The notes below the pieces were generated by a model. That model was not told the origin of the DNA, searched no databases, and saw nothing but the letters and a program-made list of their open reading frames with translations. From the NCBI RefSeq assembly GCF_040938485.1, contig NW_027271351.1, forward strand, positions 124,001 through 188,000: a DNA stretch of 64,000 nucleotides. Reading direction: 5' to 3'. The DNA comes from Diadema antillarum. Its lineage: Eukaryota. Position numbers and translations under genes: made by a program. Positions 26,664 through 62,960 of this stretch are shown here, one piece after another. How positions within the stretch are numbered: position 1 is the first letter of the stretch; every line of letters begins with the position of its first letter.

Positions 26664-27198
26664 ATATTGAATGGGTTAGTCAAATACCGGTTAGTGATTG
26701 GCTAAACACAGTCACGTGATGGAGGCACAATGGTTATGTTCGCCCATGGGCAGAACATTTTTGTAACGTTCTCCCATGGTAAAACATTTTCACGTAACAA
26801 ATGACAAACGATACCAAATGATTGAACGATCATATTTTTCACGCAATCGATAGGATAAATTTGCCTATTCCATACAATGTGAAAAAGCAGATGACCGATT
26901 GTTGTAATGCATACGAAAGTGTGATTTGAAGGACCCGCGCACAGTGAATTTGGCTCTGCGCGATCGAACGATAGAGTGCGTTGTGCTGGTGGTTGACGTT
27001 GACGTATTTGACGTATTTGACTAACCCATATTATAACAGATGATGACTTTTGTTGTCGCCGAACATGTACCGAACGTTCCACCCTCAGGGTTTGAAATGC
27101 TATTTCGGGAGGCTATAAGTCCCTCAATAGCATTTCAAACCCTTTGGGTGGAACATTCGGTGTGTTCCCTCCCCCGCCAGTCATCATCTATATTATAA
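26664..27198. mobile_element. Non-autonomous Crypton-like element (17-bp inverted repeat plus 168-bp terminal hairpin)
   Basis: ATGGGTTAGTCAAATAC at 26671-26687 is inverted at 27013-27029. TTATAA at 27031 and 27193 bound a hairpin. Layout matches 60310-62960. Confidence 0.7.
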
Positions 27199-59660: not shown

Positions 59661-60123
59661 ACAACACTAATATGATATAGCACAGAGCATACCATTTTAA
59701 GAGGAATTCAGAGTTTATTTGATGAAAATCGGGTTTGGAATAACTGAAACATCCAAAAACAAAGTAAAACAAAGCAATCATTACAAAGTGTGGGTCCCAC
59801 ACTTTATTAGAATCATTCTTTTTTGGATATCTCAGCCATTTCAAAACCAATTTTTATCAAATAAACATTGAATTCCTTATAAAATTGCATGCTCTTTCAT
59901 ATTTCATATGAGATTTCTCATTATCTCACCTAAAAATGTTAGAAACCTGAAATTAGGTCTCAACCAGAACTGTACGATCCCTTTAACATAGACTGCCTCA
60001 TAATTCTTGAATACTTCAGACCATGAAATCATTTGCAGACTGTTGCATATTTCGTGTATGATGTCGAGTTAAGAGGAGCAGGATGTGAGAATTAATGTGA
60101 TGTGATATGATTCTTCTTTTCAG

Positions 60124-60309: not shown

Positions 60310-62960
60310 TTATAGGAATAACGCATTCTGCAGAGTTGTTTAGCGAGTATGCAGTGCACGAGAGGTTTCTTCTGAGCATGCGCACTCCACACAAGCCAGA
60401 GGCGAGTGTGGAGTGTGCATGCGAAGAAGAAACCTCGAGTGCACTGCATATCGCTGAACAACGACGGGATAATGTGTTTATTCCTTTTATAAGATGGCTA
60501 AGTAATTTCAAACGTGAGGTTAATATACCTTGTATGAGAAAGAAATAATGAAATAAATCAAATATCAAAGATTTTGAAGTTGTACTTACGGTTGGAAAAT
60601 GGTCCAGAGTAGGCTTTCTCCAAGATTATCCCAGCTTGTGCTGAATCTGTGATATATTCCAAAGTTTCAAATCCAACACATGAAATTGAAAATGTTCCAA
60701 CTCTCAAGAATTCAACATATTTACCGCTATTTACAGCAGATCTGACAGCTTATACTGCCTAGATCTAGTTGTTGATAGTCACGTTACATCCGTGGAAGTG
60801 GAAAACGTTTCCACTCCCCGAACGAACGTGACCGGTGTCCCTCCTGACCGTGATCGATTATGTCGACTGTGTACTAATAGTTTGGTTTTGGGTTAGAACG
60901 ATGTTATCCTGCCGGATATCGCACTCGTACTCGGAGTCGTAGTCATAGCTATTTGCTACAGTTTCTTGACTAAAGTTACTCGTTGTTGTTGCTATGGCAC
61001 TGGATGTGGAGGGGCATTCCGCGATGGCCTTGCTACAAGATGTAGATTCCTGGTCGCCCAGCTCCTGGTTCTTATTGTCCTTGTTGACATCCGAGTATAC
61101 AATTGTAGGCAAGTGGCCAACGATTCAGACATTTTTTTTCAGTTTCGTTTGGCTTGTTTTGGAATAGTGCTTCAGCGAATCTGCCAATTTGTGCCCGCTG
61201 ACACTCTGGATATCGCGAGCCTCGTATCCACAGGCATCGAGTGTTGTGATGCTGGTTGCCCTTAGACAGTGATTGGTGTACGTTAGCTTGCATCCGGCCT
61301 TTTGTGACAGATTTTTCTGTTTGTTGCCAATCGTGTTAATGCCTAATGGGGCATTGTCGAACCATGGGGTATCTTGTGCCAGCTCCTCCTTCGAAACATC
61401 TTTTGGCCTTTGCCACATCCAAGGATTTTGGGGGTTCAACTTCGCTACATATTTCTCAAATGTGGCTACCGGACATCTTTCACCCAGTTCAGGCATTTCA
61501 AACATCAAGCCAGCATCGGCTTCTCGGATGACATTTTCGCGGTTGTTTTTTGTTAGAAAGTCTCTCATTTGTACGTATATCTGTCCACAATCATCTGCTT
61601 TGATGGTAAAGTCTTCAGCTTTCATCCCACGAATATTCTCCCATCCTCGATTACAGTAAAAGGTGAGAATGTCCAAGAAAACCTTATCCTGGAGGCCTCT
61701 GGGGGTGGAGAGGTCTAGTGAGTCTTGTATCTTGCTCATGTCGTCTGATGAAATCACAGGTTTGTGTACAACGGATCCTTTACCTTCTTTCTTTGCCTTC
61801 ACTTTCATCGCTTTGAAAACGCGGTTTGCTTGAGGAAACTTGCTGCTATCACCAATATCTATTCCATAGTTCTCGACAAAGTATCTCTGAACACCGAACC
61901 TAATGTTTTGTAGCGACCTTGTTTTGTATGATTCTCCATTGTCCTTCCTTATTCCAGAGTAGAATTTGGTCAAAAACTTGTCCAAATCTTTGGTATCCTT
62001 GGCGATTTCTTCCAAATCAGTTCCAGTGAGTTTGGCAAAGTCCATGAGTTTACATTTAGCAAATTTCAATACCTTCTTTGTCCCTTTGCTGTCCATGTCG
62101 TTTACCAGTTGGTCAATCTCTTCGTCTGTCATAACTTGGAAGGAGATGGAAAAGTCCTCCTCCTTTGTTTGATTCACAGACGCCATATCTCAAGGTTTCC
62201 GAATGAGTTGTGATTTCGAAACAGATGCACAAAGGCAGGCTACAGCGACGAAACTTAAGCCAATCAGTAATCGAGATCGTAGATCGTGAGATAGACTAGA
62301 TCAAAATCAGTAAAAACGAGGAGCCATAAAAACTCTTATTTCAGCAGGAGTTAATTTTTGATAGCACAAGTTTTAAATCCTATAAAATAATATGAGTGGT
62401 GGCCTTGAAACTATCTGGTTAAATGAAGAATTTTACTGCAAAAGGTTATTTTTACTGAGTTTCCACTGAAAAATCGTCGGTACGTCCCTGGCGATCAATG
62501 AATGTGTGTCATAAATTCAATTTCTTTTTCAACATGATCTGGTGGATCAGGACGGCTGGCTAGTTAAGTTATAAGGTGATTTTGTGTGTTGTGCCTGTGT
62601 TCGGCAGACTGTTGTGGACACGAGTCAATTTTCGGTTAAAGACAACATCGAGTCTCTTTTTATATTACTAGTGCATGACTGAAATCACATTTAACCATGA
62701 AATTTTAATGTAATATTTCTAAATGTAAGCAATTAGTTTATGAAAAGTTCATTGTTCATTTTACGTGACCTCATTGAGCATAAGCTGGTACAAATCGAAA
62801 TCTCGACTTTTGAGACACTGCACATGCGCCAAAACTGTGCATTAGACAATTTGGGTGCGTGAAAATCCCACGGGCGTGCAGGGATAGACACTTTTCGCGA
62901 ATGACCACGTGGTACGCTTTGACCAATCAGCAAGCTGGAAATTACTTAGCCATCTTATAA
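60310..62960 (-). mobile_element. Crypton-type tyrosine-recombinase DNA transposon (decayed), with a 23-bp inverted repeat and a terminal 183-bp hairpin
   Basis: YR ORF at 60765-62186. Perfect inverted repeat TTATAAGATGGCTAAGTAATTTC at 60487-60509 and 62938-62960. Imperfect palindrome at 60310-60492. Confidence 0.88.
60765..62186 (-). pseudogene. Crypton tyrosine recombinase (DUF3504/CryptonA-like); 353-aa open part, ancestral ORF about 473 aa with two in-frame stops
   Basis: Catalytic R-x-x-E (NRGWEN), H-x-x-R (TNHCLRAT), SGH and Y (SLKHY) are present. The same frame continues past TGA (61125-61127) and TAA (60858-60860) to GNVFHFHGCNVTINN* ending at 60765. Confidence 0.9.

What the first reader, a model, noticed from the sequence alone, without database searches (positions are those of the whole stretch)
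60310..62960. Crypton element whose internal junction is the reverse complement of its joined ends (DIRS-ICR-like three-core layout)
Seen: the layout is core1-a...a'-core2-b...[YR ORF]...b'-core3. Core1 is TTATA at 60310 followed by GGAATAACGCATT (arm a, slightly deleted). Core2 reads AATGTGTTTATTCCTT-TTATAA-GATGGCTAAGTAATTTC (60471-60509). Core3 reads GAAATTACTTAGCCATC-TTATAA (62938-62960). Joining the two ends gives b'-TTATAA-a, the reverse complement of the internal junction. Known: DIRS retroelements carry an internal complementary region matching both termini; tyrosine-recombinase sites are inverted arms around a 6-8 bp core; integron attC and CTXphi attP are recombined as folded single strands. 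Inference: a single strand would fold into a double hairpin bringing both ends to core2, or the excised circle would hold two inverted recombination sites (Flp/2-micron-like). Either implies a transposition route beyond simple excision at short terminal direct repeats. I cannot check whether Repbase or the literature already describe this layout.
Basis: partly seen in the sequence, partly recalled or inferred. Interest (0 to 1): 0.85.

Follow-up and report, generated by a model that had tools for sequence, protein, structure and literature searches.

The report
Crypton transposon with hairpin-and-splint ends
This is a 2.65-kb Crypton (tyrosine-recombinase) DNA transposon with a long strand-specific hairpin and an internal "splint" complementary to both termini; the same layout recurs in sea urchins, starfish, brittle stars, bivalves and corals, appears undescribed in the papers I could search, and suggests these elements recombine as folded single strands.

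Summary
Window 60311-62960 is one mobile unit with this layout: TATA, a 172-nt hairpin (a..a'), TT-TTATAA, arm b, a tyrosine-recombinase gene on the minus strand, arm b', TTATAA.

- **Boundaries.** More than 35 genomic copies, including ~470-700-bp non-coding derivatives, share these ends. All carry the hairpin, so it is not a separate MITE.
- **Empty site.** Contigs of a related organism lack exactly these 2650 nt, with no target duplication.
- **Conservation.** The layout recurs in at least 7 diverged Crypton families of this genome, in S. purpuratus, Patiria, Amphiura, Magallana and a coral-type contig, and less completely in Dreissena and Porites.
- **Hairpin.** 57 of 67 pairs covary. Its imperfections are strand-specific: 27 tandem G.A loops, GNA apex triloops, and 85% purines among unpaired bases, always on the strand antisense to the gene.
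- **Joined ends.** They exist naturally in tandem arrays as b'-TATAA|TATA-a. This is the reverse complement of the internal junction except for a conserved 2-nt surplus.
- **Isomers.** No inversion or permuted copies were seen.

Best reading (about 0.4): a folded single-strand or cruciform recombination site, like CTXphi attP or integron attC, with DIRS-ICR logic. This is inferred, not shown. The papers I could search say animal Cryptons lack terminal repeats. The scan noted similar elements elsewhere in this genome.

The parts
60311..62960 (-). Whole Crypton element (2650 bp); recombinase gene on the minus strand
   Evidence: Copy boundaries. Empty site in organism B, joint 60310->62961 with 1-nt ambiguity.
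60311..60314 (+). Left terminal TATA
   Evidence: Invariant in all copies, whereas the base before it varies (T/G/A). Conserved in other families and species.
60315..60484 (+). Hairpin a..a' (arm a foot 60315-60327, arm a' foot 60471-60484, apex about 60396-60402)
   Evidence: DNA fold -68.6 kcal/mol, z -16, against -59.9 on the other strand. 57 of 67 pairs covary across 9 families. GA/GA loops at conserved positions.
60485..60492 (+). Internal core TT-TTATAA between a' and b (the 'splint' centre)
   Evidence: The equivalent in other families is TTT-TATA(A).
60493..60509 (+). Arm b, complementary to the right terminus
   Evidence: Inverted repeat I2. Retained in all deletion derivatives.
61125..62186 (-). 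Tyrosine-recombinase ORF, 353 aa, with R180 K213 H306 R309 H332 Y341
   Evidence: It ends at an in-frame stop, before the C-terminal tail that relatives have.
60858..61112 (-). Same-frame ORF (84 aa) that continues the recombinase C-terminal tail after the stop
   Evidence: my frame arithmetic: 62186-61112 = 1074, a multiple of 3. Other copies differ by 8-nt and 1-nt indels at 61098 and 61132.
62938..62954 (+). Arm b', complementary to arm b
   Evidence: Conserved in all copies.
62955..62960 (+). Right terminal TTATAA (TATA + A)
   Evidence: Invariant in copies, families and species. Followed by unrelated flank.
62920..62931 (-). CCAAT-box-like motif just inside b', upstream of the gene (putative promoter element)
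   Evidence: Seen directly in the sequence. An equivalent ATTGG/CCAAT lies inside or next to b/b' in other families. Its function is inferred.

Best explanation
**Shown.** Window 60311-62960 is a CryptonA-type DNA transposon that encodes only a tyrosine recombinase (YR).

- Read on the strand antisense to the gene, its cis-acting DNA is: TATA, hairpin a..a' (about 170 nt), TTT-TATA(A), arm b, the gene, arm b', (T)TATA-A.
- The whole is one mobile unit that inserts without a target-site duplication.
- The layout is conserved across diverged families and three animal phyla.

**Inferred mechanism.**

1. The internal junction acts as a splint. In a single strand, or in a cruciform extruded from a supercoiled circle, the joined termini (b'-TATAA|TATA-a) pair with the internal junction (a'-TTT-TATA-b).
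2. This pairing forms one long stem. At its centre sits a duplex recombination site with arms b'/b and a/a', an AT core, and two surplus bases on the terminus-bearing strand.
3. The recombinase cuts and rejoins only the terminus-bearing strand, and exchanges it with an AT-rich target.
4. The internal strand is never cut, so it persists inside every integrated copy. Host replication completes the second strand.

This is how CTXphi attP(+) and integron attC sites work. It also matches the end-to-ICR annealing proposed for DIRS-1 single-stranded cDNA.
For: **Element identity and unit of mobility**
- Searches identify the recombinase.
- Searches show that more than 35 copies and deletion derivatives share both ends and all three cores.
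- One search shows an empty site lacking exactly 2650 nt.

**Conservation of the layout**
- At least 7 families of this genome at 36-51% protein identity.
- S. purpuratus, Patiria and Amphiura.
- Magallana, a coral-type contig and, less completely, Dreissena and Porites.

**Selection on pairing**
- 57 of 67 stem pairs show double compensatory changes.

**Strand specificity of the hairpin (15 hairpins, 975 pairs)**
- The 2x2 loops are GA/GA 27 times and AA/GA 6 times. None is made of pyrimidines.
- They read 5'-YGAR-3' on both arms, which is the context for sheared tandem G.A pairs (from my knowledge of nucleic-acid structure).
- Unpaired bases count 259 purines against 46 pyrimidines.
- G.T wobbles number 23, against 3 A.C mismatches.
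- The apex is a GCA or GAA triloop in 10 of 15 hairpins.
- The favoured strand is always the one antisense to the gene. It folds better in 12 of 15 cases.

**The joined ends**
- They exist in tandem arrays as a plain abutment, TATAA|TATA.
- Folded with the next unit's internal junction, they give one continuous stem.
- The joined ends have a 9-nt centre and the internal junction a 7-nt centre in most families. A conserved 2-nt asymmetry has a role in a folded site but none in two equivalent duplex sites.

**The internal junction is never a crossover point**
- No copy has its ends at the internal junction, and no inversion isomers were seen.
- The left terminus is invariant while adjacent flank bases vary. 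This is what exchange of a single strand would give.
Against: - No circular or single-stranded molecule was observed. Only assembled contigs were available, and they listed no back-joining or strand-switch joints inside the element.
- No enzyme that would generate single strands is encoded.
- A cruciform in a duplex circle would need the less stable pyrimidine-mismatch hairpin to form as well.
- The chemistry is unknown: which strand is cut, where, and with what stagger.
- A second allele in organism B carries TATAG at the empty site. It fits the model no better than it fits a classical core-crossover model.
- Hairpins of related families are not independent samples, so the strand-bias counts overstate significance.
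- Tandem G.A stability is taken from the literature as I recall it. It was not computed with dedicated parameters.
Confidence: 0.42

Rival explanations
1. Classical Crypton route. The element excises as a double-stranded circle and integrates by duplex site-specific recombination at the terminal TATA repeats. The hairpin and the b/b' repeat are accessory. They could be extra recombinase-binding sites that assemble the synapse, a single-strand origin, a priming site or a transcription terminator. On this view their splint-like complementarity is a by-product of repeated binding sites.
For: - The Goodwin-type model is supported for CryptonF-1_cRei in Chlamydomonas, with clean excisions and a short terminal motif resembling the target (bioRxiv 10.1101/2022.05.23.493040).
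- TATA is present at both termini.
- The foot of arm a (CAAATAA-like) is conserved as sequence, as a protein-binding site would be.
- Left flanks show a weak TA-N preference resembling the right end.
- Tandem arrays are also expected from duplex recombination with an existing right end.
Against: - The empty site lacks TATA, and natural joined ends keep both TATAA and TATA. There is therefore no shared crossover core.
- Strand-specific purine mismatches and GNA apex loops are unexplained by duplex binding sites.
- About 150 nt of stem covaries without sequence conservation.
- The canonical-looking 7-nt-spaced internal site is never used as a crossover.
Confidence: 0.25
2. A double-stranded circle carries two inverted copies of a full recombination site, the joined ends and the internal junction, as in the yeast 2-micron plasmid. 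Recombination between them flips the segments, for instance to amplify the circle during replication.
For: In the circle, the joined ends and the internal junction would be inverted repeats of 40-145 bp that separate two unique segments.
Against: - More than 35 copies of family A all have the hairpin in one orientation, at 93-96% identity in direct alignment against 78-84% in inverted alignment.
- All full-length copies are collinear.
- The purine-mismatch strand is antisense to the gene in all 15 hairpins from three phyla.
- The two sites differ by a conserved 2-3 nt in their centres.
Confidence: 0.1
3. The hairpin works as RNA. It would be a structured antisense or read-through transcript, such as a small-RNA precursor or a regulatory or terminator element. 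The b/b' repeat would then be an ordinary subterminal inverted repeat.
For: - Covariation and G.T (G.U) wobble bias are also signatures of RNA structure.
- Tandem G.A pairs are stable in RNA too (my knowledge).
- Weak sub-threshold resemblance to miRNA precursor models.
Against: - The favoured strand is antisense to the only gene and starts 4 nt from the element's end. No internal promoter could drive it in an integrated copy.
- The Rfam hits are far below gathering scores and lie on the other strand.
- GNA triloops closed by C-G are a DNA mini-hairpin hallmark (my knowledge).
- No RNA run holding the stretch was found.
- This reading does not explain the splint complementarity to both termini.
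Confidence: 0.07
4. The hairpin is an independent foldback MITE that inserted at a TTATAA next to a simple Crypton. The three-core layout is then a coincidence of this locus.
For: Both sub-units are bounded by TATA-type motifs.
Against: - Every copy and derivative carries both parts with the same outer ends.
- The same arrangement occurs in diverged families and other phyla.
- The empty site removes both parts together.
Confidence: 0.01

Closest known systems
CryptonA transposons (Kojima & Jurka 2011, PMC3212892; e.g. Crypton-1_SP of S. purpuratus)
   Same: - A single intron-less tyrosine-recombinase ORF related to DUF3504/QRICH1.
- No reverse transcriptase, no terminal inverted repeats and no target duplication.
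- Non-autonomous deletion derivatives outnumber coding copies.
- The best protein relatives are echinoderm Crypton-like proteins.
   Different: That paper states that no terminal repeats, direct or inverted, were found in animal Cryptons. The 2022 curation guide (PMC8969392) and the 2026 Glomhopper paper (PMC13465315) describe only short direct repeats or poorly conserved ends. Here a conserved hairpin, an internal splint and terminal TATA repeats are present. I could not consult Repbase entries.
DIRS-1 internal complementary region (Cappello model; Malicki et al. 2020, PMC7192593)
   Same: - An internal segment whose 5' part is complementary to one terminus and whose 3' part is complementary to the other.
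- It lies downstream of the coding region, near one end.
- The element encodes a tyrosine recombinase.
- DIRS-1 intermediates are single-stranded DNA, and the ICR is essential for retrotransposition.
   Different: - No reverse transcriptase, RNase H or methyltransferase.
- No long inverted LTRs.
- The arms are 13-50 nt rather than 33 + 55 nt.
- One terminus is linked to the splint by a 170-nt covarying hairpin.
- There is no transcript-truncation problem for a splint to solve.
CTXphi attP(+) and integron attC (folded single-strand sites for XerCD and IntI)
   Same: - Two inverted half-regions on one strand pair to build the recombination site.
- The site has unpaired or extrahelical bases at its centre.
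- The hairpin foot is conserved while the stem is variable.
- Exchange of one strand predicts that the uncut strand persists inside the integrated element, which is exactly the layout observed (my knowledge of these systems).
   Different: - Those systems are bacterial, and their single strands come from phage replication or conjugation.
- Those recombinases belong to other tyrosine-recombinase families.
- Nothing comparable has been reported for a eukaryotic transposon, and it is not demonstrated here.
Strand-biased circularizing integrative elements (SEs) of Vibrio (Nonaka et al. 2022, PMC9345347)
   Same: [quoted passage not shown]
   Different: - They are bacterial, have four genes including two recombinases, and have a different end structure.
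- There is no evidence here for copy-out.
2-micron plasmid Flp/FRT
   Same: A circle with two inverted copies of a tyrosine-recombinase site.
   Different: Flp inversion gives two isomers. Here only one orientation is ever seen, and the two sites are not equivalent.

Membership tests
Crypton (CryptonA group) | Encodes a tyrosine recombinase with the catalytic R-H-R-Y residues | tested here: met
   R180, K213, H306, R309, H332 and Y341 are invariant in an alignment with 9 relatives. A profile of the alignment hits XerA and an integrase in the PDB.
Crypton (CryptonA group) | Recombinase related to DUF3504/QRICH1; no reverse transcriptase or other transposase | tested here: met
   Pfam QRICH1 5e-5, Phage_integrase 7e-4 and DUF3504 1.5e-3, all below the curated cut-offs. 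Relatives carry PF12012 and PF00589. No other long ORF lies in the element.
Crypton (CryptonA group) | No terminal inverted repeats and no target-site duplication; short terminal direct repeat | tested here: met
   The empty site shows no duplication. TATA is at both ends. The termini are not inverted repeats of each other.
Crypton (CryptonA group) | Mobile and multi-copy, with non-autonomous derivatives | tested here: met
   111 matches: 5 copies at 95-98%, 3 at 90% and about 30 short derivatives. Insertion polymorphism between organisms A and B.
DIRS-1-type retrotransposon | Reverse transcriptase / RNase H (and methyltransferase) genes | tested here: not met
   Only the recombinase ORF is present.
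DIRS-1-type retrotransposon | Long inverted terminal repeats | tested here: not met
   The termini share only TATA.
DIRS-1-type retrotransposon | Internal region complementary to both termini (ICR) | tested here: met
   a' (60471-60484) pairs with the left end and b (60493-60509) pairs with the right end. Definition from PMC7192593.
Folded single-strand recombination site (attC / CTXphi attP type) | The site is formed by intrastrand pairing of two inverted regions, with unpaired central bases | tested here: inconclusive
   Predicted folds give a continuous stem with a small central loop. Strand-specific hairpin features support single-strand folding. No molecule was observed.
Folded single-strand recombination site (attC / CTXphi attP type) | Only one strand is exchanged; resolution is by replication | not testable with these tools
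   Indirect hints only: invariant termini next to variable flank, and an internal junction that is never a crossover point.
Flp/2-micron-type inverted sites | Two equivalent inverted sites that yield inversion isomers | tested here: not met
   One orientation in more than 35 copies and in 15 hairpins from three phyla. The site centres are 9 nt and 7 nt.
Foldback MITE plus separate Crypton (composite) | The hairpin occurs or moves independently of the recombinase unit | tested here: not met
   All copies and derivatives carry both parts, and the empty site removes both.

The most novel reading that the evidence does not exclude
Metazoan CryptonA elements transpose through a folded single-stranded (or cruciform) DNA intermediate. 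The tyrosine recombinase exchanges only the strand that carries the joined termini, and these are held on an internal splint. If so, this would be, to my knowledge, the first eukaryotic counterpart of attC / CTXphi-type single-strand recombination. It would also imply that the DIRS ICR and its single-stranded intermediate were inherited from a Crypton-like ancestor rather than invented to repair truncated transcripts.
Probability: 0.35. Interest if true: 0.9.

Novelty: new variant of a known kind. Interest (0 to 1): 0.78.

Why it matters
- **A gap in the textbook picture.** Cryptons are among the least understood classes of eukaryotic transposons. Reviews describe them as having no terminal structure beyond a few repeated bases, and their mechanism is a twenty-year-old model.
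- **What this adds.** A conserved, strand-specific hairpin plus a splint complementary to both termini is shared by echinoderm and bivalve elements and a coral-type contig (partial in Porites). This gives concrete, mutable cis-elements and a clear prediction: folded substrates should outperform duplex ones.
- **Link to DIRS.** It ties Cryptons structurally to DIRS retrotransposons, whose essential ICR has the same logic.
- **Copy-number puzzle.** It offers a possible explanation for why active Cryptons increase in copy number despite clean excisions.
- **Practical uses.** The layout is a signature for finding Crypton ends and non-coding derivatives in genome annotation. A eukaryotic recombinase acting on folded single strands could also be of interest as a tool.

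Tried and rejected
- **Empty alleles inside the window's own assembly.**
  - Whole-locus searches for two insertions found only filled alleles and unrelated flank repeats.
  - Flank-gap-flank patterns for five further insertions found nothing.
  - High heterozygosity may have broken the exact anchors, so this says little.
- **Joined ends of family A in the assembly.** All 27 pattern matches are the internal junction read on the other strand. Family B did yield joined ends.
- **Circle junctions or inversion joints in public runs.** All runs are held as assembled contigs, not raw reads. No back-joining or strand-switch joint inside the element was listed. Contigs drop rare forms, so this is not evidence of absence.
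- **Known RNA families.** Only two sub-threshold miRNA-like hits on the other strand.
- **TA target duplication with a DDE transposase acting in trans (as in MarCry).** Rejected, because the ends are not inverted repeats and the empty site keeps no TA.
- **Fold-back (self-primed) regeneration of one hairpin arm from the other.** Rejected, because it would erase the conserved G.A mismatches.
- **Polyadenylation-signal or TATA-box reading of the cores.** Not pursued. AATAAA is not conserved between families.
- **Repbase.** It could not be consulted.
Full report
**1. What is in the sequence**

- On the plus strand the element reads: TATA (60311-60314), arm a (GGAATAACGCATT, from 60315) and a long imperfect palindrome whose other foot is arm a' (60471-60484).
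- Next come TT-TTATAA (60485-60492) and arm b (60493-60509).
- About 2.4 kb follows, holding a 353-aa ORF on the minus strand (61125-62186).
- The element ends with arm b' (62938-62954) and TTATAA (62955-62960).
- The repeat finder reports b/b' with the adjoining TTATAA as a 30-nt inverted repeat at 90%, with 23 nt perfect. It reports the palindrome core as 50-nt arms 3 nt apart.
- The palindrome folds as single-stranded DNA at -68.6 kcal/mol, z = -16 against dinucleotide shuffles.

**2. The gene**

- The ORF weakly matches Pfam QRICH1, Phage_integrase and DUF3504.
- Its relatives are uncharacterised or ZMYM2-like proteins of sea urchins, a starfish and a brittle star, at 44-53% identity. The host is therefore probably an echinoderm; this is an inference.
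- In an alignment with nine relatives, R180, K213, H306, R309, H332 and Y341 are invariant. These are the tyrosine-recombinase catalytic set.
- A profile of that alignment hits XerA, QRICH1 and an integrase among solved structures.
- The window's ORF stops about 90 residues before its relatives do. A same-frame ORF (60858-61112) continues the tail.
- Contigs of other copies differ by 8-nt and 1-nt indels at 61098 and 61132. This copy therefore probably encodes a C-terminally truncated enzyme.

**3. One mobile unit, not two**

A DNA search of the window's own genome gave 111 matches.
- There are five copies at 95-98% (two are allelic pairs, and one is the window's own allele) and three at 90%.
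- About 30 short derivatives keep only element positions about 1-340 and the last 128 nt.
- Every one begins at TATAGG and ends at CTTATAA. Each contains the hairpin, the internal junction and both b arms.
- The base before TATA varies (T, G or A), and the bases after TTATAA are unrelated.
- Logan contigs of two runs from two studies of a related organism B join 60310 directly to 62961. They skip 2650 nt, with a 1-nt ambiguity.
- So the element is 60311-62960, it inserted between ...CAAT and TGTAC..., and there is no target-site duplication.

**4. The layout is conserved far beyond this family**

- A protein search of the genome found more than 100 Crypton recombinase loci at 36-51% identity, many with open frames of 420-470 aa.
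- I oriented them with the gene on the minus strand. At least seven diverged families show the same order:
  - TATA, then a hairpin of 150-180 nt whose foot reads CAAATAA-like.
  - Then TTT-TATA(A) and a family-specific arm b of 14-57 nt.
  - Then the gene, arm b', and TATA(TA)A at the very end.
- The non-coding 535-bp element at window 26664-27198, noted earlier by the scan, has the same layout in the opposite orientation.
- The same holds for loci fetched from S. purpuratus, Patiria miniata and Amphiura filiformis.
- It also holds for the oyster Magallana gigas and a coral-type contig. In Dreissena polymorpha the right end was not defined, and in Porites lutea the hairpin foot is partly degenerate.
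- The Dreissena hairpin apex is the same as in echinoderms, a GGC-GAA-GCC mini-hairpin.

**5. The hairpin is selected as a single strand, on one strand**

- A consensus fold of nine hairpins has 67 pairs, and 57 of them have double compensatory changes. Only the foot, a few internal motifs and the apex are conserved as sequence.
- The imperfections are not random. Fifteen hairpins (975 predicted pairs) gave these counts (and for the first eleven):
  - Symmetric 2x2 loops are GA/GA 27 times and AA/GA 6 times, and never pyrimidine/pyrimidine.
  - These loops sit at conserved distances from the foot, about 23, 50 and 79 nt.
  - Unpaired bases are 152 A, 107 G, 25 T and 21 C.
  - There are 23 G.T wobbles against 3 A.C mismatches.
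  - The apex is a GCA or GAA triloop in 10 of 15.
- The loops read 5'-YGAR-3' on both arms. This is the context in which tandem sheared G.A pairs form, and GCGAAGC-type mini-hairpins are exceptionally stable in DNA (both from my knowledge).
- On the complementary strand these positions become C/T mismatches.
- The favoured strand is the one antisense to the recombinase gene in all 15 cases. Even generic parameters fold it better in 12 of 15.
- Conserved mismatches also exclude models in which one arm is regenerated by copying the other.

**6. What the joined ends look like**

- For family A, a pattern spanning b' to a found only the internal junction on the other strand, at 27 sites.
- For family B, the same kind of pattern found three natural joined ends reading ...GTTG-TATAA-TATA-CAAATAG....
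- These lie in head-to-tail tandem arrays of non-autonomous units of about 600 bp:
  - One array has two units that are 99.8% identical.
  - Another has three older units. The third place is a duplicate of that region.
- So the termini abut without sharing a core, in agreement with the empty site.
- The joined ends therefore have a 9-nt centre (TATAATATA), while the internal junction has a 7-nt centre (TTTTATA). The arms are exact complements.
- When the natural junction is folded with the next unit's internal junction, it gives one continuous stem. The same is true of the window element's ends joined in silico. The stem runs from b'/b through the AT core into the hairpin, with a small central loop.

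**7. What was not seen**

- No copy has its ends at the internal junction, so there are no permuted insertions.
- No copy has the hairpin or the gene segment inverted. Direct alignments are 93-96% identical, against 78-84% for inverted ones.
- Contigs showed no back-joining or strand-switch joints within the element. Contigs cannot show rare forms, however, and no raw-read run was available.

**8. Mechanism**

*Shown:*
- The element is a Crypton-type recombinase transposon with an integral, conserved architecture of hairpin, splint and terminal TATA.
- It inserts without duplication.
- It forms tandem arrays with plain end-to-end junctions.

*Inferred (about 0.4):* the joined termini and the internal junction are the two strands of one folded recombination site. 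The site would form in a single-stranded circle, on an exposed single strand, or as a cruciform of a supercoiled circle. Only the terminus-bearing strand is cut and exchanged. This one idea accounts for:
- the three-core layout, because the uncut strand stays inside the element;
- the conserved 2-nt asymmetry between the two centres;
- the strand-specific hairpin stabilisers;
- the fixed orientation of hairpin and gene;
- the fact that a canonical-looking 7-nt-spaced internal site is never a crossover point;
- the invariant termini next to variable flank.

It mirrors CTXphi attP(+) and integron attC, and also the annealing of DIRS-1 single-stranded cDNA ends to the ICR (PMC7192593).

*Rivals:*
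- A classical duplex circle with accessory binding sites (0.25).
- A 2-micron-like pair of inverted sites (0.10, disfavoured by the lack of isomers).
- An RNA-level hairpin (0.07).
- A composite of two elements (refuted).

**9. An unexplained detail**

- One run of organism B also has, at similar depth, a second allele of the empty site. It reads CAAT-TATAG-AGTAAAATGAA....
- It has the same length as flank plus TATAA plus flank, with three substitutions.
- It could be a diverged haplotype that happens to carry TATA, a target-like allele, or an old excision footprint left by TATA x TATA recombination. I cannot tell which.
- Left flanks of 16 family A insertions show a TA-N preference, with A at -2 in 11 of 16. 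Five of 13 right flanks start with TA. The target thus weakly resembles the centre of the joined ends.

**10. Comparison with the literature**

- Kojima and Jurka (PMC3212892) write that they found no terminal repeats in animal Cryptons.
- The 2022 curation guide says the only distinguishing feature is a short direct repeat (PMC8969392).
- Full-text searches combining Crypton with hairpin, stem-loop, palindromic, cruciform, foldback, internal complementary region or single-stranded found no description of this layout.
- Repbase could not be checked.

**11. Verdict**

- The element is a member of a known class with an apparently undescribed, deeply conserved cis-architecture. This makes the Crypton mechanism experimentally testable.

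Noticed in passing
window 26664-27198: A non-coding 535-bp element with the same layout in the opposite orientation: b..b', ATTATAA, a hairpin of about 160 nt, then ATATTATAA. It has different arm sequences and a CCAAT-like motif next to b. It is probably a non-autonomous Crypton of another family.
   Followed up: partly
L080:2608-3805 (G000:C1633, minus strand) and L079:2133-3856 (G000:C49): Head-to-tail tandem arrays of ~600-bp non-autonomous family-B Crypton units with precise TATAA|TATA junctions. The two units in L080 are 99.8% identical, so the dimer is recent.
   Followed up: yes
window 60310/62961 and 60315/62974 (organism B contigs): Two different element-free alleles occur at this locus in organism B. 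One is clean. The other has TATAG plus a diverged right flank. Whether the second is a target-like allele or an excision footprint is open.
   Followed up: partly
window 61098, 61125-61132: This copy has 8-nt and 1-nt length differences from other copies and an in-frame stop that cuts off the recombinase C-terminal tail. The tail continues in the same frame at 60858-61112.
   Followed up: partly
window 59900-59990: Summed contig depth of about 160,000-760,000 in all four runs, with many loose ends at 59986. This suggests the edge of an extremely abundant short repeat just left of the Crypton.
   Followed up: no
L025:261-639: A 379-bp repeat present at 96-97% identity in at least 30 places. It also matches itself on the opposite strand at about 70%, so it is a foldback-type element.
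   Followed up: no
L024:1-852: An ~850-bp repeat present at 98-99% identity in at least 38 places of the genome. It is a young, high-copy element of unknown type.
   Followed up: no
L018 and L019, left end of the Crypton derivative: Another element with CAGGGAGG...CCTCCCTG ends sits inside the hairpin foot, apparently with a GAATAAC duplication.
   Followed up: no
L075 (Dreissena polymorpha), reverse-complement positions about 3030-3770: The hairpin, core and first ~300 nt are present three times in tandem, and a 77-nt inverted repeat reaches into the start of the recombinase gene. The bivalve element has a more complex or partly duplicated end.
   Followed up: no
window 60348-60448: A contig of organism B lacks the central 99 nt of the hairpin in some copy. 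This is a symmetric deletion, as expected for an unstable palindrome.
   Followed up: no
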